Shown: positions 4,126 through 62,771 of the stretch, one piece after another
Layout: each line of letters opens with the position of its first letter
Numbering within the stretch: the stretch's first letter is position 1
Assembly: GCA_002269645.1 (NCBI GenBank)
Contig: NIVC01002166.1
Span: 1 to 64,000, forward strand
Direction: 5' to 3'
Source of the DNA: Macrostomum lignano
Lineage: Eukaryota
Length of the DNA: 64,000 nucleotides
The notes under the pieces: generated by a model
Seen by the model: the letters and a program-made list of their open reading frames with translations, nothing else
The model's database searches: none
What the model was told of the DNA's origin: nothing
Position numbers and translations under genes: made by a program

Positions 4126-5008
4126 GACAGTTCGAATAGTTCGAAACAGAGTTTGAAAGATAACTGTACCCTTTTATCCCAGTGTACTTTGTACAGCATA
4201 CTAGATTTTCTACAAAAAAGGCACTGTGGTGCGCGTGAGCTCACAAATGCTTTCTTCTACTCAATTGTTTGCCTCAGATAAGTATTGAACTGCCGCTTCC
4301 CATCTCTCTCTTCCCTCTCCCTACCTCTCTCTACCTCAGCACATTAGTTTTACCTGTTGGTTGATTCTGTCTACGCGTTCAAACCTTGCATTTTTTCCAT
4401 TCCTTTGTTGTGCCAGCGCAGTGCAGGGTTGCACGGCCTAAAAGCATAGATGATTTTTCAAAACTGCCTCCGCATCGTTAACATTTTACAGCCAGTTAAA
4501 TTGCCTGCTGACTTGTTGCTTATGCTTGAAATTATTTTGTCCCCCATTCATCTTGCCTGCATCAGCCGTTTTGCGTATACCAGTGTAGAGGATTTTTGTC
4601 CCCCTGGCAGAGAGCTGCGGCTGTGTGGGCTTTATTCTTTTCAACAATATATCTACATGTCGTGACCCGGGTCGGTTTGGGTGCCCAGTCCCGAGTACAA
4701 TATATTTTACGTAATCTAACAGGCGTAGTGACGCTCTGTCTGTACTTTTATGAATACGAGCAGGCGTGACGACGCTCTGCGATAATAGTTCGATTCCTCT
4801 GGTGTTGTGACACTCAGAGTTCACGCTGCGGCTCGAGGTGTGGTGACACTCTCGGGTGCTTCTAGTTTCGATACTGTAGGTTGTACACGCTATATAAAGT
4901 AACCGGTACAGTACTACAATAATACGCAATATACAACGCTGCTGTGCCGCAGTGGTCACAGTCGCAGGCGTGATGACGCTCTAGCTATGGAATCACTGCT
5001 ACGGCAAG

Positions 5009-5209
5009 GCCTCGGAAAAGCTAAAGAAGCGAATGAACTCGGGGGTCTTACCGGTGCCAGAAACTGTGGAGCTCGTTCGAGTATCGCTACCACTTGACCG
5101 CTTTATTTGTAGCTTTGGGTACCACAGATCGATAAACAGAGATGCCAAAATCCGAATTTGGACATGCAATAAATTGAGTCCCCGCAGTAAGAGACCGTAT
5201 AGACACGGC
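5009..5209 (-). ncRNA. Spliced-leader (SL) RNA-like sequence, interrupted (probable SL RNA pseudogene or variant)
   Basis: Minus 5209->5163 reads GCCGTGTCTATACGGTCTCTTACTGCGGGGACTCAATTTATTGCATG and ends in ATG like flatworm SL exons. GGTAAGACC (5052-5044), which can pair with GGTCTCTTAC, lies ~110 nt further on. Homologous to 54852-54948. Confidence 0.6.
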
Positions 5210-5604
5210 TCGCTTGAATATCGCTAGGTTAGATTGAAGAGCTAGGCACGGGCGCGGAGCGGAGAGCGGGGAGCTGGCTGGGCCAGGCTTGAGCACTCCA
5301 CTTAACAGGGTAGAGGGGCAGACAACGCGAGAGAGAGAGAGAGATGCCAAACAAAAGAGACGACCCTTCAGCCAATCAGCGTGCCCGCCGAGCAGATCTG
5401 ATTGACTGGGGGCCAGAAAAGAAAACCACAAAAACACAAGCCCAGCCAATCAGCGACCGCCGCGGGAAAGACTCAAGCCGGGCTGAGCGCCCCCCCCCCC
5501 AACCAGCCAGAACTGGTCTGGGGATGGCCGCCTAGGGCGCACATAAAAAACAACTCAAAAAGTGCAAGAGCACTCAACAGGCCAGACACTACATACGCGT
5601 GGAG

Positions 5605-5790
5605 CAGACCAGCTCAGCGGTGAACACAGCCATGAGGGCCAGCCCCAAGGCACAGATAGTGTACATGCTTGAGGATTAGAAAGTCAGGACCGCAGTACAC
5701 CCTGTGCGAGCGTGTGTATGAATGCAGTGCCTGCGTACTGTATTGGTGCGCTTGTGTGCGCTCAGGTCAGGAGTCAGTGGAATGGGCACA
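5605..5790 (+). mobile_element. Copy of the SINE-like family
   Basis: cacagccatgaggg ... gattagaaagtcaggaccgcagtacaccctgtg ... gtactgtattggtgcgcttg ... gagtcagtggaatgggca is the reverse complement of 2755-2910. Confidence 0.7.
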
Positions 5791-15256: not shown

Positions 15257-27444
<12,188 letters not shown>

Positions 27445-39800: not shown

Positions 39801-42187
39801 TTTTCAGATCCCTCAATTAGATTGAAATCCCATATTTCAGATCCCTTAATTAGATTGAAATCCCCTCTATCAGATCCCTTAATTAGAATGAAATCCCATA
39901 TTTCAGATCCCCTAATTAAGTCCTTGCTTTTAGATGCTCAGCAGCTCAGGTCTAACTAATATCGCAAAGTTCCGCCTTCCCTAATCCGCAGCGCACCTTA
40001 GAGTACTTCCTCCAGACAGAGGATTACCGCCTCTCTCTAGACGAGCAATTTGAATTCGTCAATCTGTGGTTCGTGCTGATCATGCTCAACGACCTGCTTA
40101 CCGTCGTTGGTTCGATTCAGAAAATTTTAATCGAATATAAGGTGTGTTCTTTGGGTAGAATTTTGACACTTGCTACTTACGTAAACTAGTAGCTATATAT
40201 GTGTATAAATTTTTGCCAATTTTCAGGTTGGCAACAATGACAATTACATCACCTGCGGCCTGTTCCTCGGTGGCGGCGCTATGCTAGTGTGGTTGGGCAC
40301 GCTTCGATATTTGAATTACTTTGCCAAATACAATGTGAGTTTTGTAAAGTGATAATTTGTACTTTGCACTTTGTGTCTTTTGATCACTAGTGTGTCTTTG
40401 TTCCTTTGATCAGTACTGTACTTTGTGTCTTTTGATCAATAGTGTGTCTTTGTTCCTTTGTTCAATAGTGTGTCTTTGTTCCTTTGATCAGTACTGTACT
40501 TTGTGTCTTTTGATCAATAGTGTGTCTTTGTTCCCTTGATCAATAGTGTGTCTTTGTTCCTTTGATCAATAGTGTGTCTTTGTTCCTTTGATCAATAGTG
40601 TGTCTTTGTCCCCTTTGATCAATAGTGTGGGTTTGTTGGCCTCTGGTGCACCGCCTTTGGCGACATGGTCCCACAACCAGCGCTGAGGCAGCTCTGCCCA
40701 ATCCGCAGACTCCTGAGCGCATGCAAGCGCACCAACACAGTACGCAGGCACGCAATCACACACTCGCTCACACAGGGTGTACAGCGGTCCTGACTTTCTA
40801 ATTGTCAGGCGCTTTGTTGCAGTGCTGTATTAATTTGAGCTACAGTGGGTCTTTGTTTTTATTTGTGTAGCCATGCCCTTTCAACTCTCGCCCGCCACCC
40901 CTTCTTACCCAGGTGCTGCTGCTGACCATCAAGCGCAGCCTGCCGGACATCATCCGCTTCCTGGTGTGCGCCGTGGTGCTGTTCCTGTCCTTCTCCCTGT
41001 TCGGCTGGATCACCTTCGGGCCTTATCACGCCAAGTTCCGCGGCTTCTTCATCACCCTGGAGTGCCTGTTCGCGCTGGTTAACGGAGATGACATCTTCAA
41101 TACGTTCGCCATGCTGCCGCAGGACACCACCAACACCTACATCTATGTGGTGTCGCGCATCTATCTGTACTCATTTATATCGCTGTTCATCTATATTGTG
41201 CTCAACGTGTGCATCTCTATTATAATAGAGGCGTACGAGACTGTCACGGTAAGGCTGATTTAAGCGATTTGTAAATATTCCATAGTCAATTAAGCTAAGT
41301 ATCCACTGAATACTCGCTGAATACTCGCTGAATACTCGCTAAATACCCGCTGAATACTCGGTAAATACCCGCTGAATACTCGCTGAATACTCGCTAAATA
41401 CCCGCTGAATACTCGGTAAATACCCGCTGAATACTCGGTAAATACCCGCTGAATGAGCTGAATACCCGCTGAATGAGCTGAATACCCGCTGAATGAGCTG
41501 AATACCTGCTGAATGAGCTGAATACCCGCTGAATGAGCTGAATACCCGCTGAATGAGCTGAATACCCACTGAATGAGCTGAATACCCACTGAATGAGCTG
41601 AATACCCGCTGAATGAGCTGAATACCCGCTGAATGAGCTGAATACCCGCTGAATGAGCTGAATGCCCGCTGAATGAGCTGAATACCCGCTGAATGAGCTG
41701 AATACCCGCTGAATGAGCTGAATACCCGCTGAACGATCTATATGTCACCTAAAGTCAGTCCGGCAGTCCAGCTAACCGAGTCCGCGCTCCCCAACCCCCG
41801 ACAGCACCGCAGTGGTCTGACGCAGCCCTCCCGCCTGTGGCAGTTCATCGCCGAGTGTGCCGACCCGGCCAGCTCCGTCGCTTATCGACACGACGCCGCC
41901 GAACGCGCGGCGGCCGCCGCCCGGCCCTTCAGCTGGCTGATGCGCGCCCTTCAGTCCTCCCTGGTGTCCCGGGTTCGATTCAACCGGCATCGAACCGCTG
42001 GCGGCGTCGGCGGCGTCAGGGAGTTCAATGTCAACGATAGCGATGAACTCGGAGGTGGCGGCGGCAGCGGAGACATCGGCGGCGATGGCCGCGGCGGCAG
42101 GAGACGCAGCGAGAGTCTGGCCTCGCCTTGGGACGCCGACAATCTGGGCGGTAGCGGCGGATTCGACTATGGCAGACTGTCGTCTTT

Positions 42188-43849: not shown

Positions 43850-45370
43850 AGGTGCTTATTGATTCACTCTTGATTTACTTTCAGAGTCACACTTTTTGAT
43901 TCACTCTAAAAGGTATTCTGATTCACTCCTCGAGTCACTCTAGTAATCTCTCTTGGTTTCACTCTTTGGAGTCACCCTAATTCACTCTTAGAGTCATCTT
44001 GGATTCACTCGCGAGTCACTCTTTTGTTCAATGCCAGATTCACTATTAGTTATTTGAGTCACTCTTGATTCACTACTAGTTACTTGAGTCACTCCTTGAT
44101 TCACTCCTAGAGTCACTCTCATTCCCTAGAGTCACTCTGATTCACTCCTAGAGTAACTCTGACTCACTCCTAAAATCGACTCTGATTCACTCCTAAAGCC
44201 ACTCTGATTCACTCCGAAAGTCACTATGATTCATCCCTAGAGTCACTCTGATTCATCCCTAGCGTCACTCTGATTCACTCTTAAAGTAACTCTGATTCAC
44301 CCTAGAGTCACTCTGATTCACTCCTAAAGTCACTCTGATTCACTCCTAAAGTCACTCTAATTCACTTCTAAAGTCACTCTGATTCACTCCTAAAGTCGCT
44401 CTGATTCACTCCTAAAGTCACTCTGATTCACTCCTAAAGTCGCTCTGATTCACTCCTAAAGTCACTCTGATTCACTCCTAAAGTCACTCTGATTCACTCT
44501 TAAAGTCACTCTGATTCACTCCTAAAGTCACTCTGATTCACTCCTAAAGTCGCTCTGATTCACTCCTAAAGTCACTCTGATTCACTCCTAAAGTCACTCT
44601 GATTCACTCTTAAAGTCACTCTGATTCACTCCTAAAGTCACTCTGATTCACTCCTAAAGTCACTCTGATTCACTCCTAAAGTCACTCTGATTCACTCCTA
44701 AAGTCACTCTGATTCACTCCTAAAGTCGCTCTGATTCACTCCTAAAGTCACTCTGATTCACTCCTAAAGTCACTCTGATTCACTCCTAAAGTCACTCTGA
44801 TTCACTCCTAAAGTCGCTCTGATTCACTCCTAAAGTCACTCTGATTCACTCCTAAAGTCACTCTGATTCACTCCTAAAGTCACTCTGATTCATCCCTAGA
44901 GTCACTCTGATTCACTCTTAAAGTCACTCTGATTCACTCCTAAAGTCACTCTGATTCACTCCTAAAGTCACTCTGATTCATCCTAGAGTCACTCTGATTC
45001 ACTCTTAAAGTCACTCTGATTCACTCCTAAAGTCACTCTGATTCACTTCTAAAGTCACTCTGATTCACTTCTAAAGTCACTCTGATTCACTCCTAAAGTC
45101 ACTCTGATTCATCCCTAGAGTCACTCTGATTCACTCTTAAAGTCACTCTGATTCACTCCTAAAGTCACTCTGATTCACTCCTAAAGTCACTCTGATTCAC
45201 TCCTAAAGTCACTCTGATTCACTCCTAAAGTCACTCTGATTCGCTCGCGAGTCACTCTTTGATTCCAATCGCAAATTCAGTCCTAGAGCCACTGATTCAC
45301 TCCTGGAGTCACTCTTATGTTCAATCCTAGAGTCACTCTTATGTTCAATCCTAGAGTCACTCTATGATTC
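43850..45370. repeat. Minisatellite, 22-bp unit CACTCCTAAAGTCACTCTGATT with degenerate flanks
   Basis: Visible array ending immediately upstream of the USP start codon. Confidence 0.94.
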
Positions 45371-45391: not shown

Positions 45392-46268
45392 ATGGGTGCC
45401 TACCTAAGCAGCAGCGCAGCCGCCACGGCCGCTGCCTCATCTGCCGAGTCCGGCAACCCGCTAAACAGCGGCATTCCGCGCACGCATCGCCGAGTCCTGA
45501 TCGCCATTGACGAATCGCTGGGCGCTCAAAAAGCCTTCGATTTCTGGAGCGGCGTGGCGCGCAGTCAGGATGACAGCATCCTGCTGGTGAACGCTGTGGA
45601 GGTGCCGAACGTGCCGACCGGACTGCTGCTGTCCCCCACCGGGTAGGCCGTGCAGACAGGGTTGAGCAGTGCTTGACGAATAACTTTTGAATTTTGAATT
45701 TGAAAACTATTAAAACAAATCTCTCATATACCCACAAAATACTAAGACAGTACAAGAGAATCTTCCTCAGTCAGCTTTGAGATCAGACATTATCCAGCTT
45801 TGAGAACAGCCATTAACCAGCTTTGAGAACAGCCATTAACCAGCTTTGAGAACAGCCATTAACCAGCTTTGAGAACAGCCATTAACCAGCTTTGAGAACA
45901 GCCATTAACCAGCTTTGAGAACAGCCATTAACCAACAATAAGAAGCTGTTAATGAACTCGAGTCTCCCAAATTCCGCAGCTCATTTGACTACTCGGAGTA
46001 CCAGAAGCAGACTCAGCCGCTGCTGGAACGGGCCCAGCGACTCAAGGCCAACATGATGGCCAAATGCGAGCAGCGCAAGCTTCGCTGCAAGTTCATCACG
46101 GAGGTTGGCAGCCCGGCAACTGCTGTGCTTGACGCGGCTAAGACCTTCTCAGCCTCGGTCATTGTAGTTGGCTGCTGCGGTCACAAGAACCACTTGTTGG
46201 GCTCGGTTAGCAACTATATTCTGCAGCACTCCTGCCGGCCTGTGGTCATTGTGCCCCGGTTCGACTGA
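45392..46268 (+). CDS. Universal stress protein (UspA domain), 2 exons
   Basis: Exon 45392-45642 (RRVLIAIDES...AFDF...DDSILLVNAVE) and exon 45980-46268 (GSPATAVLDAA...VIVVGCCGHKNHLLGSVSNYILQHSCRPVVIVP). The phase-2 GT-AG intron is compatible. Confidence 0.9.
45795..45935. repeat. Intronic minisatellite, 23-bp unit CAGCTTTGAGAACAGCCATTAAC
   Basis: About 6 copies in the USP intron. Confidence 0.9.
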
Positions 46269-46442
46269 ACTGCAGCTGGGATAACCTTGAATTGACTGAT
46301 AGGTGGGTGCAGGCTGATTGCTTTGCACTTTGTTGCTTTGAGAAGGTCTGCTAATCTGTTGCCTAAATGTCATGTGATGTGATGTATATTCGCCTTACCA
46401 ATGAGTTAGCGGAAAATTATGGTTAAGGTTTAAAGTTATATT

Positions 46443-46830
46443 CCAGCCAATCAGAGACGAGATCAGTCTAGCTTAGAGCAAGCATCCAGCCAATCAGAAA
46501 CGAGATCAGTCTAGCTTAGAGCAAGCATCCAACCAATCAGAGACGAGATCAGTGTAGCTTAGCTAGCTTCCAGCCAATCTGAGACGAGATCAGTCTAGCC
46601 TAGCTAGTTTCCAGCCAATCAGAGACGAGATCAATCTAGCTTAGCTAGTTTCCAGCCAATCAGAGACGAGATCAGTCTAGCTTAGCTAGTTTCCAGCCAA
46701 TCAGAGACGAGATCAGTCTAGCCTAGCTAGTTTCCAGCCAATCAGAGACGAGATCAGTCTAGCCTAGCTAGTTTCCAGCCAATCAGAGACGAGATCTGCC
46801 GTCTAGATTAGTTTTTCCAGCTAATCAGAA
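46443..46830. repeat. Tandem repeat, ~41-bp unit containing AGCCAATCAG
   Basis: About 9 copies of CCAGCCAATCAGAGACGAGATCAGTCTAGC. Confidence 0.9.
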
Positions 46831-47419: not shown

Positions 47420-48935
47420 GAGGGGCAGGGTGGATACAGGGGCGATAGAGGGGCAGGGTGGATAGAGGGGCAGGGAAGATAGAGGGGCAGGGTGGATAGA
47501 GGGGCAGGGAGATAGAGGGGCAGGGAGGATAGAGGGGCAGGGAAGATAGAGGGGCAGGGAAGATAGAGGGGCAGGGAGGATACAGGGGCGATAGAGGGGC
47601 AGGGAGGATAGAGGGGCAGGGTGGATAGAGGGGCAGGAAGATAGAGGGGCAGGGTGGATAGAGGGGCAGGAAGATAGAGGGGCAGGGTGGATAGAGGGGC
47701 AGGAAGATAGAGGGGCAGGGAGGATAGAGGGGCAGGGAAGATAGAGGGGCAGGGTGGATAGAGGGGCAGGGAGATAGAGGGGCAGGGAGGATAGAGGGGC
47801 AGGGAAGATAGAGGGGCAGGGAAGATAGAGGGGCAGGGAGGATACAGGGGCGATAGAAGGGCAGGGAGGATAGAGGGGCAGGGTGGATAGAGGGGCAGGA
47901 AGATAGAGGGGCAGGGTGGATAGAGGGGCAGGAAGATAGAGGGGCAGGGAGGATAGAGGGGCAGGGAAGATAGAGGGGCAGGGTGGATAGAGGGGCAGGG
48001 AGATAGAGGGGCAGGGAGGATAGAGGGGCAGGGAAGATAGAGGGGCAGGGTGGATAGAGGGGCAGGAAGATAGAGGGGCAGGGAAGATAGAGGGGCAGGA
48101 AGATAGAGGGGCAGGAAGGATAGAGGGGCAGGGAAGATAGAGGGGCAGGGTGGATAGAGGGGCAGGGAGATAGAGGGGCAGGGAAGATAGAGAGGCAGGG
48201 AAGATAGAGGGGCAGGGAGGATACAGGGGCGATAGAGAGGCAGGGAGGATAGAGGGGCAGGGTGGATAGAGGGGCAGGAAGATAGAGGGGCAGGAAGATA
48301 GAGGGGCAGGGTGGATAGAGGGGCAGGAAGATAGAGGGGCAGGGTGGATAGAGGGGCAGGAAGATAGAGGGGCAGGGAGGATAGAGGGGCAGGGAAGATA
48401 GAGGGGCAGGGTGGATAGAGGGGCAGGGAGATAGAGGGGCAGGGAGGATAGAGGGGCAGGGAAGATAGAGGGGCAGGGAGGATACAGGGGCGATAGAGGG
48501 ACAGGGAGGATAGAGGGGCAGGGTGGATAGAGGGGCAGGAAGATAGAGGGGCAGGGAGGATACAGGGGCGATAGAGGGACAGGGAGGATAGAGGGGCAGG
48601 GTGGATAGAGGGGCAGGAAGATAGAGGGGCAGGGAGGATAGAGGGGCAGGGAAGATAGAGGGGCAGGGAGGATACAGGGGCGATAGAGGGGCAGGGAGGA
48701 TAGAGGGGCAGGGAAGATAGAGGGGCAGGGAGGATACAGGGGCGATAGAGGGCCAGGGAGGATAGAGGGGCAGGGTGGATAGAGGGGCAGGAAGATAGAG
48801 GGGCAGGGAGGATAGAGGGGCAGGGAAGATAGAGGGGCAGGGAGGATACAGGGGCGATAGAGGGGCAGGGAGGATACAGGGGCGATAGAGGGGCAGGGAA
48901 GATAGGGGGGTAGGGAGGTTAGAGGGGTAGGGATG
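47420..48935. repeat. Polypurine minisatellite, ~17-bp unit GATAGAGGGGCAGGGAG
   Basis: Visible array. Explains ORF 47394..49016. Confidence 0.94.
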
Positions 48936-49454
48936 ATAGAGGAAGTATAGAGGGAATGGGACTATTACAGAGGCTGGGAGAGTGGCAGGGGTATAAACAG
49001 GAGCATGACAAGTCAATCTGCTCTACAAGTGCATCAAGGGAGAGCGGTTATTCGCAGCTCAGCATCGCAGAGTGCCTCCCGGGAGTTGGCATGGAACTGG
49101 CCGGATAAATTCAAATGTTTTTGCTGAGCCTGCGCTTAAAAAGCGGAATTTTTCGAGCCGTCGTTTTTTCACTTCGCAGCGGAGAGTCGGGCAGCCATTT
49201 CCCAATTAGCATGGGAGCGGCAGGGCTGGGCTGGGAACATCAAAATGAAGCCGTTTTAGTCCGGCTGGCGATTTCAGGGACTGCGCTGTCCGTGTGCCGA
49301 GCTGATTGTGAATTCTGCTGCTGCGATTCGGGATTAGTCTAGACAGATGAAGTGCTGGGAGGCTGGCTGCACTGGCTCGGGTGCATTGCCGGTTCAGTGG
49401 ACTCGCGCCTGAGGTGATCGGGATGGCTCGAGAGCTGCAAATTTAGAGGTCGGA

Positions 49455-50195
49455 GTGATTCTCAAGATGCTGTAGGAGTGATTCTCAAGATGCTGTAGGA
49501 GTGATTCTCAAGATGCTGTAGGAGCGATTCTCAAGTTGCTGTAGGAGCGATTCTCAAGTTGCTGTAGGAGCGATTCTCAAGATGTTGTATGGGCGATTCT
49601 CATGATGTTGTAGGGGCGATTCTCATGATGATGTAGGGGCGATTCTCATGATGCTGTAGGGGCGATTCTCATGATGTTGTAGGGGCGATTCTCATGATGA
49701 TGTAGGGGCGATTCTCATGATGATGTAGGGGCGATTCTCATGATGATGTAGGGGCGATTCTCATTTTGTTGTAGGGGCGATTCTCATGATGTTGTAGGAG
49801 TGATTCTCATGATGCTGTAGGGGCGATTCTCATGATGTTGTAGGGGCGATTCTCATGATGATGTAGGGGCGATTCTCATTTTGTTGTAGGGGCGATTCTC
49901 ATGATGATGTAGGGGCGATTCTCATGATGCTGTAGGGGCGATTCTCATGATGTTGTAGGGGCGATTCTCATGATGTTGTAGGGGCGATTCTCATGATGAT
50001 GTAGGGGCGATTCTCATGATGATGTAGGGGCGATTCTCATGATGATGTAGGGGCGATTCTCATTTTGTTGTAGGGGCGATTCTCATGATGTTGTAGGAGT
50101 GATTCTCATGATGCTGTAGGGGCGATTCTCATGATGTTGTAGGGGCGATTCTCATGATGATGTAGGGGCGATTCTCATGATGCTGTAGGGGCTGT
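49455..50195. repeat. Minisatellite, 23-bp unit GTAGGGGCGATTCTCATGATGAT
   Basis: Visible array. Confidence 0.94.
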
Positions 50196-53096: not shown

Positions 53097-53645
53097 AACT
53101 AGAGCTGGTATAGACATCACAACTAGAGCTGGTATAGGCATCACAACTAGAGCTGGTATAGGCATCACAACTAGAGCTGGTATAGGCATCACAACTAGAG
53201 CTGGTATAGGCATCACAACTAGAGCTGGTATAGGCATCACAACTAGAGCTGGTATAGGCATCACAACTAGAGCTGGTATAGGCATCACAACTAGAGCTGG
53301 TATAGGCATCACAACTAGAGCTGGTATAGGCATCACAACTAGAGCTGGTATAGGCATCACAACTAGAGCTGGTATAGACATCACAACTAGAGCTGGTATA
53401 GGCATCACAACTAGAGCTGGTATATATAGACATCACAACTAGAGCTGGTATAGGCATCACAACTAGAGCTGGTATAGGCATCACAACTAGAGCTGGTATA
53501 GGCATCACAACTAGAGCTGGTATAGGCATCACAACTAGAGCTGGTATAGGCATCACAACTAGAGCTGGTATAGGCATCACAACTAGAGCTGGTATAGGCA
53601 TCACAACTAGAGCTGGTATAGGCATCACAACTAGAGCTGGTATAG
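53097..53645. repeat. Minisatellite, 24-bp unit CTAGAGCTGGTATAGGCATCACAA
   Basis: Visible array. Confidence 0.95.
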
Positions 53646-54851
53646 ACGCCAAACAGCCGGGGCCTCTGATATCGAATGTCAGACTGGCCCAGTTGAGTAT
53701 AAATTAGCCATTGCCCGATGAAAATCGCAGGCAGGCTGTTGTGCGCAGCTTCCTGTTATTTCTGCTCGATGCTTTCAGGTGCAAATAATTGTAAGCCATA
53801 AAAGCGGAGGATTTACGCTGCTTTTAGCTGATGGGGACGGACCGGCATCCTTCATCATGCTTGCTTGGGATCGAGTGGAGTTGTGGGTGCCCGGGTTTGC
53901 AGATCAAACGAGTGGCAGCCCACATCTCCTTAATTGAGTTATCAACACGGCTGCCCCTGTGCTCAGATATCGCCGATTTGCAATAAATATCCCATATCCC
54001 CATTTTTTGCTTCTCCTCCCATGGGGTCCCGGCCGGTTTCAGACCCCCCAGTAAAAGGCTTGTAGGGGAATGATGACGAGAGGCGTCAAATAAAGATGCT
54101 AACAAAATCGGCAGATCAGCAGACAGCTCAGAGCTAATTATTCGTTCCGGTCAAGCGCGGGTTGTTAAAGTGCGCCCAAATGCAGCAGAGGCTGAATCAA
54201 TATTTCAAGTTTGCACTAATTTATTTTTGGCCCGCTTGCGTGTTTGCCATCGCCTGCCTGCTACAGTCAGCATTGCTATTATTACCATGATGACTCAAGC
54301 CCGATTGCTGCGGAGTCCGGGCTTGAGCACGTGTGTGGGCGGCTGCTCTCGGTTGCTGGGAGACCGACAGTAGAGAAAGGAAACTAGCAACGTCGCTGAC
54401 AATACCATCCGGTTGCTACGAGAGTTTCAAACTCCTATGAAGAGACGAAGAGCCACTGTGTCTCGTAAAGTGGCGATCGATACCGGATCCGGAATGGTAA
54501 AGATTCTATTTTAATCATAGATTCATAGACCAGGAAGTTCAACCATAGACAATCAATCCTGGCGCTGGAGAGGAGATTGCAACTGAAAGCTACGAGTATA
54601 ATAGTTGCCACTATAAAAAAACAAAAAAATGAATTTCTTTCACCTTAGACCTAAAGGTGATTTTGCCATAGAAAAAATCAATTCTGTTCGCTTGATCGTG
54701 AAAGACTGATCAATTGACGTATTCTCACCGATTGGGGCTACGTAAATTAAAATTGCTACTCAACTCCAACCTGAGCACCGCACTTACAAGGGGGGCTTCA
54801 GGACGCACCCACACAAGGCTTCACCAGAGTCTGGACGCAGTGGTACAGCCT

Positions 54852-54948
54852 GGGGCTGGCACACATTGGCCGGTACGCCTCGGTAAGCTCTGGCGGGTCT
54901 TAATTCGATTGCTCTAGATTGAGTTAAGTAAGAGACCGTCTTTCCGGC
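54852..54948 (-). ncRNA. Degenerate SL RNA-like gene copy
   Basis: Minus strand reads GCCGGAAAGACGGTCTCTTACTTAACTCAATCTAGAGCAATCG-AA-TTAAGACCC...AGCTTACCGAGGC...AATGTGTGCCAGCCCC. The ~97-nt length and motif order fit an SL RNA, but the ATG, donor and Sm site are decayed. Confidence 0.55.
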
Positions 54949-55810
54949 TAGCAAGGAGAGAAAATCAAGACGTGAACACGACACCACACCCCAACACACG
55001 GCGTCAGTAATTAAATATCTACGGCCCGCGGAGGGGGAGGCCAACAGCCCTCCAACCCACCACCCCATCGATCCCAACCCGCGCCAGCCAACCACACCGC
55101 CAGGGGGGGAGGAAACACCGATCCCCCCGCCGCTCGGCCCAGCCAATCAGAACGCAGTAAGCAACAAATAGTACAGAAGCTGAACGATAAGTCATAGTAA
55201 AAAAACGCCCGGCTTGAACCAATTGATGCATGTGGGGACAAACTGAGTCAACCTGGCACTGAAACAAAAGTGCATGCAGAAAACAACAGTAATAAAAGTA
55301 TTGAGTGCAAGTTTCACTAATAGATCGATAAAATTGACTCTTAGTCACTCAGAAGTTAGCAATGGAAAATCTTTTTTAAAATGAACATTACTACGCCTTT
55401 ACACTTTCATTAAGCCTGGAGACGAAAAAAGCTTTAATGTTTCAAGCAATTTAGCCAGCCCATCTTGGTCTGGGGGATAGATTGGCATTGTACGTATTGA
55501 GGCAATGCTGCCAGTGTTTGTACTACAGCCGGGTAGGGACCGAGAGAGTTTCCAATTGGTGAAAAGGTGCCTTCGCAACCAACGCCCTTGAAGCTAATTT
55601 TTTGTTTGCTACGTCAATCAGGGCCAAAGCCAGTGGGAGCCGGGGCGGGCGGCCTCCTCACTCCGCCGCCCTCTCGTCCCCCCCCCCCCCCCGGCGGGTC
55701 AGATTGCGTGTATTTAAGCTGCGGCACGGGCCGCCCCAGCTGCCCTTACGCCACCAGCTCAGCCGGCACCAGCTCAGGCGCAACACTCGACAGCTACTCT
55801 CGAACCCGAC

Positions 55811-56230
55811 ATGCCGACTGCCGCGCACTGCCGCCAGCCGCACCAGCCGCCGCCGCTGGCCCTGCTACTGGCTCTGCTATTAATTTGCCTGGGCGCCCAG
55901 CTGCCAAAAGCGGCGGCGCAGAACGCCGAGGTCGAACGAATCTGCGGCCAAAATCCGTTCGAAAGGCTGAAGCAGATCGCCGAAAATATTCTGCAGAGAA
56001 CTCTAACAGGCCGTGAGTAGCTGCTCAGGTTGCTAACCGATAATATCAAACAGCTTAAACTTCGCGTTGCTAACCCCGGCAGCCACTCCCTTTATTCCGG
56101 TAATTTTGCAGCTGAGTTCCACATCCTGTTCAACCGGGCGCTTAGCGATCCGGAGAAGGGCCCGCGGCTGAAGGCTGCGGTCACCCGCTACCAGGAGTGC
56201 AGCCTGGGCGTGGAGAACAGCCACTTCTGA
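55811..56230 (+). CDS. Small secreted orphan protein (~106 aa, 2 Cys), 2 exons
   Basis: Exon 55811-56012 (signal LALLLALLLICLGAQLPKAAA), intron 56013-56111 (GTGAGT...TTTTGCAG) and exon 56112-56230, phase-1 compatible. GC-rich codon usage matches the other genes. TATTTAA lies at ~55710. Confidence 0.7.
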
Positions 56231-57291: not shown

Positions 57292-57685
57292 CAAACCCCA
57301 ACCCCAACCACAACCCCAACCACAATCCCAACCATAACCCCAACCACAACCCCAACCACAACCCCAACCTCAATCACAACACCAACCATAATCACAACAC
57401 CAAATCAAACACAACCCCAACCCCAACCACAACCACAACCACAACCCCAACCCCAACCTCAATCACAACACCAACCATAATCACAACACCAAATCAAACA
57501 CAACCCCAACCCTAAACCAAACCACAACCCCAAACCAAACTACAACCCCAAACCAAACCACAACCCCAACCACAACACCAAATCAACCACAATTCCAACC
57601 ACAACCCCAACCCCAGTCACATCAACCACAACCACAACACCAAATCAACCACAACCCCAACCCCAACCACAACCGCAACCCAATT
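57292..57685. repeat. Degenerate (CCCCAA/CCACAA)n microsatellite flanked by a 12-bp inverted repeat
   Basis: Visible. TTTGACTGCCGA at 57279-57290 and TCGGCAGTCAAA at 57692-57703. Confidence 0.85.
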
Positions 57686-57906: not shown

Positions 57907-60867
57907 TCAAAAGAACTCGGAGTCCGAGCTCTGGCTGGTGTCGCCTCCGCCTCCGCTGCGACCGGCAGCTCCGCCGTCCCGATGCGTTACGCCGCCATCG
58001 TTGTCGACCTCGGCGCTAACAGCGGCAGTGGCGGCTGCTCCGCCAGATGCGTCGCAGTCGTCTTCGTTGGCCTGCAGCAGCGAGGAGCGAGACCGGAGCA
58101 GCAGGCGGGAGAAGCTGGGGAACATGGCGGCCAGGAGCAGCTGCAGGCACTCGGCTGTGCGGGCCGAGCTGGCGCAGGCCAGAGCGGGTACGCCGCCTTC
58201 GGCGTCGGCGCAGAATAGGTTGGCCTTCTTGCTGATCAGGTGCTCAACAACGCCGGGCAGGCCGTTGCCGGCTGCCAGGTGGATTGGCCCTCTACCAGCG
58301 CTGTCCAGCTGCGGCAGGACCAAGGCGAGACAAGGCGTGCGGTTAGCGCGGGTGGCAACCACTTGCAGCAAGAATTGAAGGTTGCTTAGGGATTTCGGGT
58401 CAATTGAGGACTTTGGGTCACTTGGGGACTTTTGGTTAATTGGGGATTTTGGGTCAGTTAGGGACTTTAGGTCACTTGTGGATTTTGGGTCAGTTAGGGA
58501 CTTTAGGTCACTTGTGGATTTTGGGTCAGTTAGGGACTTTAGGTCACTTGTGGATTTTGGCTCAGTTAGGGACTTTAGGTCACTTGTGGATTTTGGCTCA
58601 GTTAGGGACTTTAGGTCAGTTAGGGATTTTGGGTCACTTGTGGATTTTGGCTCAGTTAGGGACTTTAGGTCAGTTAGGGATTTTGGGTCAGTTAGGGACT
58701 TTGGGTTAGTTAGGGATTTTGGGTCACTTGTGGATTTTGGGTCAGTTAGGGACTTTAGGTCACTTGTGGATTTTGGCTCAGTTAGGGACTTTAGGTCAGT
58801 TAGGGATTTTGGGTCAGTTAGGGACTTTGGGTTAGTTAGGGATTTTGGGTCACTTGTGGATTTTGGGTCAGTTAGGGACTTTAGGTCAGTTAGGGATTTT
58901 GGGTCAGTTAGGGACTTTGGGTTAGTTAGGGACTTTAGGTCACTTGTGGATTTTGGGTCAGTTAGGGACTTTAGGTCAGTTAGGGATTTTGGGTCACTTG
59001 AGGACTTTGGGTCACTTGGGGACTTTAGGTCAGTTAGGGATTTTGGGTCAGTTAGGGACTTTGGGTTAGTTAGGGATTTTGGGTCACTTGGGGACTTTGG
59101 GTTAGTTAGGGATTTTGGGTCACTTGAGGACTTTGGGTCACTTGGGGACTTTAGGTCAGTTAGGGATTTTGGGTCAGTTAGGGACTTTGGGTTAGTTAGG
59201 GATTTTGGGTCACTTGGGGACTTTGGGTTAGTTAGGGATTTTGGGTCACTTGGGGACTTTGGGTCACTTGGGGATTTTGGCTACCAGGAAACAAAGGTCA
59301 TATAAAGACATGAAATAAAGGATTTAACGAGGAGTCCCTGTTTACATGTAGAATAGAAAAAACTTGACTCAATAGAGGATAGAATTGAAAAACAATCACT
59401 CCGACACTCATCACTCACAGCATTGATGAGATCCGGATCCACGATCCGCTCCAATAGGAGAAGAGCGGCTCCCTCGTCGCTAGTAGAGCAGGCGTGATGC
59501 AGACAGGTCCTGCCGTCGGCGTCAACCACCGACACGGAGGCGCCGGCATCAAGCAACAGGCTGGTGGCAGCGGCGCGCGCCTTGCCGGCTGCCAGCAGAA
59601 GCGGCGTAGCGCCTTCAGCGTCGGCGACGTCAACGGTGGCGCCGTAGCGAAGCAGCAGGCTGGCCGCTTCGCAGTGATCGCCGTGCGCGGCGGCGTGCAG
59701 CGGGGTTCGACCACGCGAGTCGCGTCCGTCCACCTGGGCGCCGGCCTCTAGCAGGAGCTCAACGCAGGTGTCGTGGCCGCGGCCGGCGGCGCAGTGCAGC
59801 GGGCTGTAGGAGTTCCAGGCGCGCCAGACTGGCTTCTGCTCTCCCGAGGCTGGCGGTGCCGGCGGTGTCGGCGGATGCCGCTGCAGCAGCAGCTCGACGC
59901 AGCGCGTGAAGCCATGGTAGGCGGCGTAGTGCAGCGCCGAGTAGCCTTTGGCGTCGATGCTGGCCGCAGCTTCGGGGTTGTTGCCGATGGCCGTGAGCAG
60001 GCGGTCGGTGGTGGCCTCGTGGCCGCAGGCGGCCGTCATGTGCAGCGCGTGGCGCTTTCGAAAATCGCGCGCCAGCGGATTGGCGCCAACTTTGATAAGC
60101 AGCTCAGTGCAGTCGTCGTGACCGTTGGCGGCGGCACGGTGCAGGGCGGTCCTCTCGTAGACGTCGGGCATCTGCGAATCGGCGCCTACCTTCAACAGCA
60201 GGCGGGCGGCCTCCAGGTGGCCGTTCTGGGCGGCCAGCATCAGCGGCGTGCGGTCGTGCGCATCGGCGCTGTCGATCAGCGGCCGGCCTCCGCGGCTCCA
60301 CAGCATCGCCTGGAGGACGCCGACGTGGCCAGCAGCGGCGGCGTAGTGAAGGCCGTTCCAGCCGAACAGGCCGTCCACCATCTCCAGTGCACAGCCGCTG
60401 CTGTCCAGCAGGGTCTTAACTGCGCCCAGGTGGCCCTGGTGGGCGGCCAGGTGCAGCGGCGTGCGGCCCTGCGGATCGGCGGCCGAATTTGCGGGACTCT
60501 CCGGGGCCAGGTGCTTGGCCAGGAGGCTCAACACCTCATCGTGGCCGTGATAGGCGGCCAGGTGCTGCGGGCTCGGCGAAGAGTTCCAAGCGGCCCGGAG
60601 CACGGTGGCCCTGGTGGCGTCCAGCAGGCGGGCGACGGTGTGCCGGCTGCCAGCGCGGGCGGCGAAGTGCAGCGGCAGCAGCGGGCCGAGCTCGGGGAAT
60701 TCAGCCGTCTGGCACGGATCGGCGCCGTGCAGCAGCAGCTGATCGGACAGCTGCGGGTCGCTGGCGGCGGCCAGGTGCAGCGGCGTGAGGCCCTGCCTGT
60801 CCGCCTGGCCCGGCAGGGAGCCGCCGTTCAACTGAGGGGCGAAGACGGAGAGGCATAGGATTAACGG

Positions 60868-60928
<61 letters not shown>

Positions 60929-60933
60929 CACAC

Positions 60934-60971
<38 letters not shown>

Positions 60972-62771
60972 GGACAGACAGACGGCAGCTCACCAGAGTC
61001 ACAGCCGCATTCCGATGCCCCTTGGCGGCGGCATAGTGCAGCGGAGTCCGGCCCACCGAGTCCAGGGCATTGGGATCGGCGCCCTTGCCTAGCAGATATT
61101 CGACGCACTCAACGCGCCCACCAACGGCGGCCGCATGCAGGCAAGTTCGGCCGAATGCGTCAAGCCGGCCGATGGCCAGCGGCTGGGCCAGCGTGAGCCG
61201 CTGGACGCAGTCAAAATAGCCGGACAGGCAGGCAAGATGCAGCGGCGTGAGCTGGCTGGGCCCGACTGGCCGGTCAGGCGAGGCGCCGGCCTTCATCATC
61301 ACGTCAAGGAAGAGGTCGTGGCCTCGCATCGCGGCGACGCTGAGCGGAGTGTAGCCGGAGGCATCGACAGAGTCGGGCACGGCGCCGGCGGCCAGCAGCG
61401 ACTGGGCGCGAGTGAACCGGCCGTGAACAGCGGCCATGTGAAGTGGAGTGCGGCCCTCCAGGCAGACCGCGTTCACGTTGGCATCCTCGTGAATTAGCCA
61501 GTCTAGGCACTGAGCGCTGTGCGTGCCTGCAATGTAATGATTTGAAATGAAGGTGAGAAGGTGCTTCTTCTCAGGGTTGAACATACACTTAAGGGGGGTG
61601 GTCGGTGTTGCATGTACTCTAGGGAGGCTGGGTGGTCGGTGTCGCATGTACTCTAGGGAGGCTGGGTGGTCGGTGTTGCATGTACTCTAGGGAGGCTGGG
61701 TGGTCGGTGTTGCATGTACTCTAGGGAGAGGCTGAGGTGGTCGGTGTTGCATATACTCTAGGGAGAGGCTGGGTGGTCGGTGTCGCATGTACTCTAGGGG
61801 GAGGCTGGGTGGTCGGTGTTGCATGTACTCTAGGGAGAGGCTGGGTGGTCGGTGTTGCATGTACTCTAGGGAGGCTGGGTGGTCGGTGTTGCATGTACTC
61901 TAGGGAGAGGCTGGGTGGTCGGTGTTGCATGTACTCTAGGGAGAGGCTGGGTGGTCGGTGTTGCATGTACTCTAGGGAGAGGCTGGGTGGTCGGTGTTGC
62001 CTGTACTCTAGGGAGAGGCTGGGTGGTCGGTGTTGCATGTACTCTAGGGAGAGGCTGGGTGGTCGGTGTTGCATGTACTCTAGGGAGAGGCTGAGGTGGT
62101 CGGTGTTGCATATACTCTAGGGAGAGGCTGGGTGGCGGGTGTCGAATGTACTCTAAGGGAGGCTGGGTGGCGGGTGTCGCATGTACTTTAAGGGAGGCTG
62201 GGCAAAGGCCGCAGCACGCACCCGCAGCGGCCAGATGAATGGCAGTCTGTCCCAGCTGGTTCTGAGCCTCCAGCTCCACCCCGGCCAGCTCGGAGCACAG
62301 CTGGTCGTTGCCATTGAGGCAGGCCACGTGCAGCGGCGTGTTGCCCTGCAGGGTGGCCGCGTTGACGTCGGCACCCAGGTCGACCAGCTTGCGCGCGGCG
62401 AAGATATTGCCGCAGGCGGCGGCCGTGTGCAGCGGAGTGAAGGCCTGCTTATCGCGAGCGTTGATCTCAGCGCCGTGGCGGACCAGCAGGTCGATGAGAT
62501 CCACGCTGCCGTTGTAGGCGGCCCAGTGCAGGGCGCGCCGGTCGCGCTTGTCGAATGCGTTGACCATGTCCGGCGAGCGGGACAGCAGAAGCTCGGCCAC
62601 TTCCGGGTGGCCGTTGAATGCGGCATGGTGCAGCGCCGTGTGGCCAGCCCGATCGCTGACGTTCGGATTAGTCAGATGAGGCAATAGAAGCTGGGCGCAC
62701 TCAACCGCATTGTTGGCGGCGGCCACGTGCAGCGGGGTCTGCCAGTTGCGATCGCGGCATTGGACCTCGGC
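57907..62771 (-). CDS. ANKRD28: PP6 regulatory ankyrin-repeat subunit (ANKRD28/44/52 family), 3' four exons; the 5' exons lie beyond the window
   Basis: Exons 62771-62222 (WQTPLHVAAANNAVECA, VSDRAG, NAFDKRDRRALHWAAY), 61526-60994 (GTHSAQCL, PLHMAAVHGRFTRAQ), 60831-59419 and 58308-57907 (ends SDSEFF). Many TPLH ankyrin repeats with compatible phases. Probably a co-ortholog of the three vertebrate paralogs. Confidence 0.88.
58390..59280. repeat. Intronic minisatellite, 18-bp unit TTAGGGACTTTAGGTCAG and variants
   Basis: Visible array in the last ANKRD intron. Confidence 0.93.
60868..60985. repeat. (CAGA)n microsatellite inside a 162-nt intron
   Basis: Directly visible. Confidence 0.93.
61595..62195. 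repeat. Intronic minisatellite, 34-36-bp unit GCATGTACTCTAGGGAGAGGCTGGGTGGTCGGTGTT
   Basis: Visible array. Confidence 0.93.

What the first reader, a model, noticed from the sequence alone, without database searches (positions are those of the whole stretch)
54852..55150. Second SL-RNA-like locus with a homologous upstream region: a dispersed family of SL-derived units
Seen: minus 54948-> GCCGGAAAGACGGTCTCTTACT..ACTCAAT shares ACGGTCTCTTACT and ACTCAAT with the 5.2-kb copy. It is followed by TAAGACCC, AGCTTACCGAGGC and AATGTGTGCCAGCCCC, where an Sm site plus CAGCCC would be expected. Both loci also share the identical 14-mer GCCCAGCCAATCAG about 190-240 nt upstream (55137-55150 and 5440-5453), and AAAAGTGCA further out, in C-rich and A-rich sequence reminiscent of retroelement terminal repeats. 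Established: SL RNA genes are usually in tandem arrays. Inference: two dispersed copies 50 kb apart imply either many SL orphons with promoters, or a mobile element that has captured an SL RNA gene. The latter could let it self-cap or act on trans-splicing.
Basis: partly seen in the sequence, partly recalled or inferred. Interest (0 to 1): 0.75.

Follow-up and report, generated by a model that had tools for sequence, protein, structure and literature searches.

The report
Decayed spliced-leader RNA gene copy
This is a worn-out, almost certainly non-functional copy of the flatworm (Macrostomum) spliced-leader RNA gene lying about 200 bp from an ordinary CCAAT promoter box, not a mobile element that captured the gene, so it is a fairly ordinary genomic relic.

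Summary
All the quoted motifs are at the stated coordinates. The window is from a Macrostomum flatworm. The minus-strand stretch 54948->54845 is a real derivative of the Macrostomum SL RNA gene. Its first 22 nt match the published 45-nt leader at 21/22 and start exactly at leader position 1. TAAGAC sits at +47, exactly where two canonical genes I recovered (L001, L002) have GTAAGAC.

As an SL RNA gene it is dead. The leader's 3' half has decayed (about 14/23 identical, with a 4-nt deletion). The terminal AUG is lost and the GU donor is UU. Stem-loop II is gone and the Sm site AUUUUUAG reads AUGUGUGC. A covariance model built from the canonical genes scores it at noise level (9.2 bits, E 1.5). 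The "5.2-kb copy" is also defective. It is two abutting degenerate units, and the first has lost its donor through a 15-nt deletion.

The "homologous upstream region" is not homologous. Only the 14-mer GCCCAGCCAATCAG, a textbook CCAAT box, is shared, and its core also forms a minisatellite at 46.4 kb. I found no repeat boundaries, target-site duplications or transposon ORFs.

Verdict: an SL RNA pseudogene or orphon, a known kind of locus in flatworm genomes. The box's similar position at both loci remains a small unexplained oddity.

The parts
54845..54948 (-). Degenerate full-length SL RNA gene unit (the finding): leader-like nt 1-46, dead donor, decayed stem-loop II and Sm region, remnant 3' hairpin
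   Evidence: nhmmer against the canonical gene aligns model positions 1-43 starting at position 1. The covariance-model alignment spans 1-103 at 9.2 bits, E 1.5. Sequence read.
54927..54948 (-). Best-kept block: GCCGGAAAGACGGTCTCTTACT, 21/22 identical to leader nt 1-22 (GCCGTAAAGACGGTCTCTTACT)
   Evidence: Published M. cliftonense 45-nt leader and canonical genes L001/L002. Chance expectation 5e-7.
54903..54926 (-). Decayed 3' half of the leader (TAACTCAATCTAGAGCAATCGAAT): 4-nt deletion, about 14/23 canonical positions kept, terminal ATG replaced by ATC
   Evidence: Pairwise alignments. Heterogeneity against the first 22 nt: Fisher p = 0.01.
54894..54903 (-). TTAAGACCCG, homologue of the canonical exon-intron junction GTAAGACACCG. 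The GU donor is mutated to UU. TAAGAC is at +47 as in canonical genes.
   Evidence: Chance of the 6-mer at the exact offset is 2.4e-4.
54845..54870 (-). GCCAATGTGTGCCAGCCCCAGGCTGT: Sm-site position now AUGUGUGC (canonical AUUUUUAG), followed by remnant 3' hairpin CAGCC/GGCUG (canonical AGCCC/GGGCU)
   Evidence: Covariance-model alignment and fold.
55137..55150 (+). GCCCAGCCAATCAG, a CCAAT box (NF-Y-type consensus) 189-202 nt upstream of the unit on the opposite strand
   Evidence: Consensus match is from general knowledge of NF-Y sites.
55084..55100 (+). Degenerate second copy of the box (CCAGCCAACCACACCGC), 55 bp from the first
   Evidence: Direct repeat D1.
5105..5209 (-). The '5.2-kb copy', unit 1. 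Leader 34/36 identical from ACGG to ATG. A 15-nt deletion removes GTAAGACACCGGTGA (donor and 3' strand of stem I). Sm-like GGAUUUUGG is kept.
   Evidence: nhmmer E = 7e-6. Alignments.
4994..5104 (-). Unit 2 of the 5.2-kb locus, abutting unit 1: heavily diverged leader, but the CACCG|GTAAGACC donor is retained (GT at 5051-5050)
   Evidence: Local alignment to the canonical gene scores 42 against a null maximum of 39 in 4000 window segments.
5440..5453 (+). Identical CCAAT 14-mer at the 5.2-kb locus (-231 to -244). Further boxes lie at 5368-5379 (+) and 5398-5409 (-).
54783..54787 (-). Strong GTAAG donor-like site at +162 from the leader start (unexplained). The 5.2-kb locus has its unit-2 GTAAG at +159.
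   Evidence: Sequence. A second unit at 55k is not statistically detectable (p about 0.08).

Best explanation
The locus is a dead copy (pseudogene or orphon) of the Macrostomum spliced-leader RNA gene.

Shown:
- It is collinear with a complete canonical SL RNA gene from leader position 1 to the 3' hairpin.
- It has lost every element needed to donate a leader: the leader's 3' half and AUG, the GU donor, the hairpin before the Sm site, and the Sm site itself.

Inferred:
- It arose by duplication of an SL RNA gene. This family is small and, from the two solitary genes recovered here, apparently not tandem-arrayed in Macrostomum.
- It then decayed, so it cannot form an Sm snRNP or take part in trans-splicing.
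- The copy came from the gene or from unspliced SL RNA, not from a trans-spliced mRNA, because the intron start is present.

The 14-mer shared with the 5.2-kb locus is a CCAAT-type promoter box. It is either a leftover distal element of SL RNA gene promoters or the box of a neighbouring plus-strand promoter. It is not evidence of a common mobile element.
For: - Organism and reference: the M. lignano leader, its GTAAG donor and the 109-nt gene are published, as is the M. cliftonense 45-nt leader. The best protein relatives of window genes are from M. lignano (83%).
- Two canonical genes were recovered. L001:615-723 and L002:1589-1690, which sits next to a U1 gene, have identical 45-nt leaders and near-identical introns. 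L001 folds into three hairpins with z = -3.3.
- At the 55k unit, leader nt 1-22 match 21/22 and the homology starts at position 1. TAAGAC is at +47 and CAGCCC..GGCU at +91, against +86 in the canonical genes.
- Defects: ATG is now ATC, GT is now TT, and AUUUUUAG is now AUGUGUGC. Stem-loop II is unalignable. Fold z = -0.6. The covariance model gives 9.2 bits, E 1.5, below unrelated hits.
- Functional leaders are invariant over all 45 nt in L001, L002 and M. cliftonense. This copy differs at about 10 positions and carries indels.
- No repeat family, significant target-site duplication or transposon domain was found.
- Such loci are documented in flatworms. Of 1,179 leader-bearing loci, 867 were rejected as true SL RNA genes, and donor-less copies were called pseudogenes (PMC12582326).
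Against: - Decay is uneven. Nt 1-22 and the TAAGAC block, the two strands of stem I, are almost intact while the rest is near random (Fisher p = 0.01). This could mean residual constraint or recent partial gene conversion.
- The identical CCAAT 14-mer lies at a similar distance and in the same orientation at both SL-like loci, although the DNA between is unalignable. The 12-mer core has only three places in 64 kb, and the chance estimate is about 5e-6.
- The canonical comparators come from other Macrostomum-like species, so the intron of this species' own functional gene is unknown.
- The intron part of the homology is not significant on its own.
- No expression data could be consulted.
Confidence: 0.72

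Rival explanations
1. The locus is a transcribed SL-derived unit that keeps SL-type promoter modules: a distal CCAAT box near -200 and the first 22 nt acting as an intragenic element, as in Ascaris SL RNA genes. It would produce a donor-less SL-like small RNA, or a genome-encoded leader-like first exon spliced in cis from the GTAAG at +162.
For: - The 14-mer is identical at -202 and -244 in the same orientation.
- A related TCAATCAG, the only one in 3 kb, lies at -224 of canonical gene L001.
- Nt 1-22 and the stem I partner are selectively retained.
- GTAAG lies at +159 and +162 in the two loci.
- From memory, CCAAT motifs occur in distal elements of some vertebrate snRNA-type promoters (rat U3), and the Ascaris leader is a promoter element.
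Against: - The second canonical gene, L002, has no CCAAT-like box upstream.
- No proximal motif is shared among any of the four upstream regions.
- The same 12-mer forms a minisatellite at 46.4 kb, so the box is not specific to SL loci.
- The boxes could equally serve plus-strand promoters. At 5.4 kb a BEACH gene lies on the plus strand.
- There is no Sm site, so a stable snRNP is unlikely.
Confidence: 0.14
2. The locus is a retroposed copy. Either unspliced SL RNA was reverse-transcribed and inserted, or it is the 5' end of a trans-spliced (possibly retrotransposon) transcript that carried the leader.
For: - Homology begins exactly at leader position 1.
- Partial-leader loci from retroposed trans-spliced transcripts are reported to be common in flatworms.
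- A 12-nt imperfect direct repeat (11/12) flanks 54682-54956.
Against: - The exon-intron junction (TAAGAC at +47) and the 3' hairpin remnant are present, which excludes a spliced mRNA source.
- There is no A-rich tail.
- The 12-nt repeat is at chance expectation, about 0.9 per 900 bp, and is low-complexity.
- No reverse transcriptase or other transposon ORFs lie nearby.
- Co-occurrence with the CCAAT box at both loci would be a double coincidence.
Confidence: 0.1
3. A mobile element (LTR, YR or LINE type) has captured an SL RNA gene and dispersed it.
For: There are two SL-like loci 50 kb apart, and both have the 14-mer upstream.
Against: - No alignable sequence exists beyond the short motifs.
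- 54000-56200 has no other copy in the window.
- An HMM built from all units finds no further members.
- There are no terminal repeats and no significant target-site duplication.
- No transposon domains appear in any ORF tested.
Confidence: 0.03

Closest known systems
Macrostomum SL RNA gene (M. lignano, 109 nt; Ustyantsev & Berezikov 2021, PMC8629364). Canonical examples recovered here: L001:615-723 and L002:1589-1690
   Same: Same 5' end and first 22 nt (21/22). ACTCAAT core of the leader. TAAGAC at +47. Remnant of the 3' hairpin. Similar overall length (about 104 nt).
   Different: No terminal AUG, no GU donor, no stem-loop II, no Sm site. Covariance-model score is at noise level. The fold is no better than shuffled sequence.
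SL-RNA pseudogenes and rejected leader-bearing loci in parasitic flatworms (Calvelo et al. 2025, PMC12582326)
   Same: A leader-like sequence without a conserved donor or AUG, failing the motif-order and hairpin criteria used to define true SL RNA genes.
   Different: Most rejected loci there carried only partial leaders next to LTR or LINE elements. Here the whole gene length, including the intron start, is traceable and no mobile element is nearby. The host is a free-living macrostomid.
Relict leaders from retroposed trans-spliced cDNAs (dinoflagellates; Slamovits & Keeling 2008, as cited in PMC12582326)
   Same: Leader sequence encoded in the genome outside a functional SL RNA gene.
   Different: Those relics are a leader fused directly to mRNA body. 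This one retains the exon-intron junction, so it did not pass through trans-splicing.
snRNA-type distal promoter elements with CCAAT motifs and the NF-Y CCAAT box (recalled from general knowledge, not tested)
   Same: AGCCAATCAG matches the NF-Y consensus. The position about -200 to -245 resembles that of snRNA distal elements.
   Different: Binding and function are untested. One of the two canonical SL RNA genes lacks any such box, and the motif also occurs in a minisatellite.
Retrotransposons specific for SL RNA genes (NeSL-1 in C. elegans; SLACS/CZAR/CRE in trypanosomatids; recalled from general knowledge)
   Same: They are a known link between SL RNA genes and mobile DNA.
   Different: Those elements insert into SL genes and encode reverse transcriptase and endonuclease. 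No such ORF or insertion is seen within several kb of either locus.

Membership tests
Functional flatworm SL RNA gene | Leader sequence matching the species or genus leader over its full length | tested here: not met
   21/22 for nt 1-22, but about 14/23 with a 4-nt deletion for nt 23-45. Functional leaders are 45/45 identical in L001, L002 and M. cliftonense.
Functional flatworm SL RNA gene | AUG at the 3' end of the leader, followed immediately by a GU splice donor (GTAAG in Macrostomum) | tested here: not met
   The locus reads ...GCAATCGAAT|TTAAGAC. ATG is replaced and GT is TT at the homologous position.
Functional flatworm SL RNA gene | [quoted passage not shown] | tested here: not met
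   The outer part of stem I is retained (GGUCU/AGACC plus CGG/CCG). The inner stem I and the whole of stem-loop II are lost. Fold z = -0.6, against -3.3 for the canonical gene.
Functional flatworm SL RNA gene | Sm-binding site (RAUnGR-like) between hairpins II and III | tested here: not met
   Canonical GUAUUUUUAGC corresponds to CAAUGUGUGCC here.
Functional flatworm SL RNA gene | Significant score with a sequence-and-structure model of known members | tested here: not met
   Model R1 from L001 and L002 gives 9.2 bits, E 1.5, below unrelated window hits at 12.3 bits. Rfam has no family that detects even the canonical gene.
Functional flatworm SL RNA gene | Leader found on mature mRNAs; capped small RNA expressed | not testable with these tools
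SL RNA pseudogene / orphon (derived from the gene, non-functional) | Demonstrable homology to the SL RNA gene including non-leader parts, in gene order | tested here: met
   Leader start at position 1. TAAGAC at exactly +47 and CAGCCC..GGCU within 5 nt of the canonical offset. The intron part alone is not significant.
SL RNA pseudogene / orphon (derived from the gene, non-functional) | Loss of elements essential for function | tested here: met
   The donor, AUG, Sm site and stem-loop II are all lost.
Mobile element carrying an SL RNA gene | Several copies with shared sequence and shared boundaries | tested here: not met
   Within the window only: the two loci share nothing alignable beyond a 13-mer and a 14-mer. 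54000-56200 is single-copy. The HMM finds no more units. Genome-wide copy number is not testable here.
Mobile element carrying an SL RNA gene | Terminal repeats or target-site duplications, and transposon ORFs (RT, integrase, YR, endonuclease) | tested here: not met
   No inverted repeats, and only a chance-level 12-nt direct repeat. Pfam finds GPCR, BEACH, ankyrin and mucolipin domains and no transposon domains.
Retroposed trans-spliced transcript relic | Leader joined directly to exon sequence, with no SL intron, an A-rich 3' tail and target-site duplications | tested here: not met
   The intron start TAAGAC follows the leader at the canonical offset. There is no A-rich tail. The candidate target-site duplication is at chance level.
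NF-Y-type CCAAT box | Match to the RRCCAATSR consensus in a promoter-like position | tested here: inconclusive
   AGCCAATCAG fits the consensus (recalled from knowledge). The 12-mer core is enriched, 15 matches against 0.5 expected, but most are in a minisatellite. Binding and the promoter served are untested.

The most novel reading that the evidence does not exclude
In this Macrostomum, decayed SL RNA gene copies stay transcriptionally active. They would keep a distal CCAAT box about 200-245 bp upstream and the first 22 nt of the leader as promoter modules. The two loci, each with a GTAAG donor about 160 nt from the leader start, would then provide genome-encoded, SL-like, cis-spliced first exons or donor-less SL-like RNAs for neighbouring genes. 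That would be a route by which SL RNA genes are exapted as promoters or leader exons.
Probability: 0.08. Interest if true: 0.55.

Novelty: new member of a known kind. Interest (0 to 1): 0.25.

Why it matters
- It shows that leader-like hits in flatworm genomes must be checked for the donor, the Sm site and the hairpins before being called SL RNA genes. In this window neither SL-like locus (three degenerate units in all) passes.
- It provides two complete canonical Macrostomum-type SL RNA genes for comparison. One of them is hidden as contamination in a bacterial MAG.
- It raises a cheap, testable question: does a CCAAT box near -200 belong to the SL RNA gene promoter in macrostomids?
- If the relics are simply dead, the finding matters only for annotation and for estimating birth-and-death turnover of this small gene family.

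Tried and rejected
- **Global alignment of 4980-5600 against 54730-55340 and blastn at word size 7.** No homology beyond the 13-mer and the 14-mer, so the claim of homologous upstream regions is rejected.
- **Rfam at gathering and E-value thresholds.** Uninformative, because Rfam does not recognise even the canonical Macrostomum SL RNA.
- **The look-up of encoding contigs with the 788-aa ankyrin ORF.** Nothing on record. The species is absent from the protein collection (best hit 83%), so no orthologous or allelic copy of the locus could be fetched.
- **Viral-contig scan for the leader.** Nothing found.
- **HMM built from all four units.** No further units in the window.
- **A second degenerate unit downstream of the 55k unit (54845->54700).** Suggestive strings are present (ACTGCG..AGACTC, GGTGAG, CAATTGATCAGTCTTT), but p is about 0.08-0.1. 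Not claimed.
- **Intron-only alignments of the 55k unit to the canonical intron.** Not significant.
- **Search for a proximal promoter motif shared by canonical and window loci.** None found. The two canonical upstream regions are not alignable with each other either, so absence of promoter similarity is weak evidence.
- **The 12-nt direct repeat flanking 54682-54956 as a target-site duplication.** At chance level.
- **Chance match.** Rejected; the expectation is 5e-7.

Full report
**What is in the sequence**

Read on the minus strand, 54948-> is GCCGGAAAGACGGTCTCTTACTTAACTCAATCTAGAGCAATCGAATTAAGACCCGCCAGAGCTTACCGAGGCGTACCGGCCAATGTGTGCCAGCCCCAGGCTGT. The 13-mer ACGGTCTCTTACT occurs exactly twice in the window, here and at 5186-5198, both on the minus strand. 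The 14-mer GCCCAGCCAATCAG also occurs exactly twice, at 5440-5453 and 55137-55150. AAAAGTGCA lies at 5557-5565 and 55266-55274.

**Organism and reference sequence**

The published Macrostomum lignano spliced leader is CGGTCTCTTACTGCGAAGACTCAATTTATTGCATG. [quoted passage not shown]

The full leader assembled for M. cliftonense is GCCGTAAAGACGGTCTCTTACTGCGAAGACTCAATTTATTGCATG (PMC10468722 supplement). The large ankyrin ORF at 59281-61647 (a PP6 regulatory subunit) has its best relatives in M. lignano at 83% and 67% identity. The window is therefore from a Macrostomum, probably not M. lignano itself.

**Recovering canonical genes**

The gene sequence is not printed in the papers, so I scanned public collections for leader plus donor. 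Two contigs came back.

- **L001**, a 3-kb metagenome contig. It carries a canonical gene at 615-723, next to a Na/K-ATPase beta-subunit gene.
- **L002**, a contig filed under a Flavobacteriaceae MAG. It carries a U1 snRNA gene (Rfam 151.7 bits) followed by a canonical SL RNA gene at 1589-1690.

Both have the identical 45-nt leader. The intron consensus is GTAAGACACCG.TGATCCAAT..TGGATC..TATTTTTAGCAGCCCT...ATGGGCT, and the two differ mainly in hairpin loops. L001 folds into the expected three hairpins, with the donor paired in stem I and a single-stranded AUUUUUAG Sm site (z = -3.3). In each contig the gene is solitary, so tandem arrays are not the rule in this group.

**The 55-kb locus compared with the canonical gene**

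What is kept:

- Homology starts exactly at leader position 1 (nhmmer).
- Nt 1-22 match at 21/22, with an expectation of 5e-7 for the window.
- TAAGAC sits at +47, exactly as in both canonical genes.
- CAGCCC..GGCU sits at +91, against +86 in the canonical genes.

So the whole gene length is traceable, and the copy derives from the gene or from unspliced SL RNA, not from a trans-spliced mRNA.

What is lost:

- Nt 23-45 have a 4-nt deletion and about 14/23 identity.
- The terminal ATG is gone.
- The donor reads TT instead of GT.
- Stem-loop II is unalignable.
- The Sm site reads AUGUGUGC.

The predicted fold is no better than shuffled sequence (z = -0.6). A covariance model built from the two canonical genes scores the locus at 9.2 bits, E 1.5, below unrelated hits in the window. 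Functional leaders are invariant over all 45 nt across the three sources, so this copy is clearly not under that constraint. It fails each criterion used in the recent flatworm survey to separate true SL RNA genes from other leader-bearing loci. In that survey 867 of 1,179 candidate loci were rejected, and donor-less copies were read as pseudogenes.

**The 5.2-kb "copy" is not a functional gene either**

- **Unit 1 (5209->5105)** has a nearly intact leader, 34/36 identical from ACGG to ATG, with GAA changed to GGG. A 15-nt deletion removes GTAAGACACCGGTGA, so ATG runs straight into TCCAAATTCGGATTTTGG, the stem-loop II and Sm remnants.
- **Unit 2 (5104->4994)** follows directly. Its leader is barely recognisable, but it keeps CACCG|GTAAGACC. 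Its alignment to the canonical gene beats all 4000 random window segments.

A comparable second unit downstream of the 55-kb unit is not statistically detectable (p about 0.08).

**The upstream regions**

The two 600-bp regions do not align. The aligner does not even match the leaders, and blastn returns only the 14-mer and the 13-mer. The region 54000-56200 has no other copy in the window.

The 14-mer contains AGCCAATCAG, which from general knowledge is a textbook CCAAT/NF-Y consensus. Its 12-mer core is strongly enriched, with 15 matches at one mismatch or fewer against 0.5 expected. Ten of those lie in or beside a 41-bp minisatellite at 46441-46796.

No proximal motif is shared between the window loci, L001 and L002, and the two canonical upstream regions are not alignable with each other. 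L001 has its only YCAATCAG at -224. L002 has none.

No significant target-site duplication and no inverted repeat surrounds the unit, and no A-rich tail follows it. The ORFs tested encode a rhodopsin-type GPCR, a PH-BEACH protein, the ankyrin subunit, mucolipin and repeats, with no transposon domains. The idea of a mobile element that captured an SL RNA gene therefore has no support.

**What remains odd**

1. Decay within the 55-kb unit is uneven. The two strands of outer stem I are almost intact while the rest is near random (Fisher p = 0.01).
2. The identical CCAAT 14-mer lies 189-244 nt upstream of both SL-like loci in the same relative orientation. The core motif has only three places in 64 kb, and the rough chance of this arrangement is 5e-6.
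3. A strong GTAAG lies at +159 and +162 from the leader start in the two loci.

These points leave room for a minority reading in which the relics keep promoter activity, or were duplicated together with a distal promoter element. The alternative is that both sit beside ordinary plus-strand promoters. At 5.4 kb a BEACH gene follows on the plus strand. None of this can be settled without the rest of the genome and expression data.

**Verdict**

The finding is real as an observation, and correct in calling the locus SL-derived. The locus is best explained as a decayed SL RNA gene copy, a known kind of object in flatworm genomes. The proposed dispersed family and mobile-element mechanism is not supported. 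Interest is low to moderate. The only potentially new point is the recurrent CCAAT box at the position of an snRNA-type distal element.

Noticed in passing
window 4994-5209 (minus strand): The '5.2-kb SL copy' is two directly abutting degenerate SL RNA units of about 105-110 nt with no spacer. Unit 1 lacks the donor through a 15-nt deletion. Unit 2 keeps GTAAGAC but has a scrambled leader. It lies between a minus-strand GPCR gene (1703-2950) and a plus-strand BEACH gene (6940 onward).
   Followed up: partly
L002 1-3752 (JAGQZA010000190.1, filed as a Flavobacteriaceae MAG): This 'bacterial' contig carries a eukaryotic U1 snRNA gene (1121-1283, Rfam 151.7 bits). About 305 bp downstream is a canonical Macrostomum-type SL RNA gene. 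It looks like flatworm contamination of a metagenome-assembled genome, and it shows U1-SL RNA gene linkage.
   Followed up: partly
L001 615-723 and 1774-2922 (Ga0302322_100095745): An environmental metagenome contig holds a complete canonical Macrostomum-type SL RNA gene upstream of a Na/K-ATPase beta-subunit gene (PF00287). The closest protein relatives are unnamed Logan assemblies at 76-77% identity.
   Followed up: partly
window 46441-46796: A 41-bp minisatellite (8.6 copies, 93% matches). Each unit carries the CCAAT-box core CCAGCCAATCAG. It lies just downstream of a universal-stress-protein-like ORF (46053-46268, plus strand).
   Followed up: no
window 44087-45246, 47437-48942, 49457-50192, 53097-53645, 57294-57681, 58386-59280: The 15 kb around the finding is packed with unrelated satellites of period 22, 17/67, 23, 24, 6-18 and 36/90 bp. 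Several of them create long spurious ORFs.
   Followed up: no
window 5625-5770, 2767-2900, 19643-19705, 27181-27221, 40712-40802: A short interspersed repeat (80-90% identity, about 60-110 bp detected) occurs at five places, once just upstream of the 5.2-kb SL-like locus and once inside the GPCR ORF region. It is unrelated to the 55-kb locus.
   Followed up: no
window 54670-54681 and 54957-54968: A 12-nt imperfect direct repeat (AGAAAAAATCAA / AGAGAAAATCAA) brackets a 275-bp segment that begins 9 nt upstream of the SL-like unit. It is at chance level and low in complexity, so it is not claimed as a target-site duplication.
   Followed up: partly
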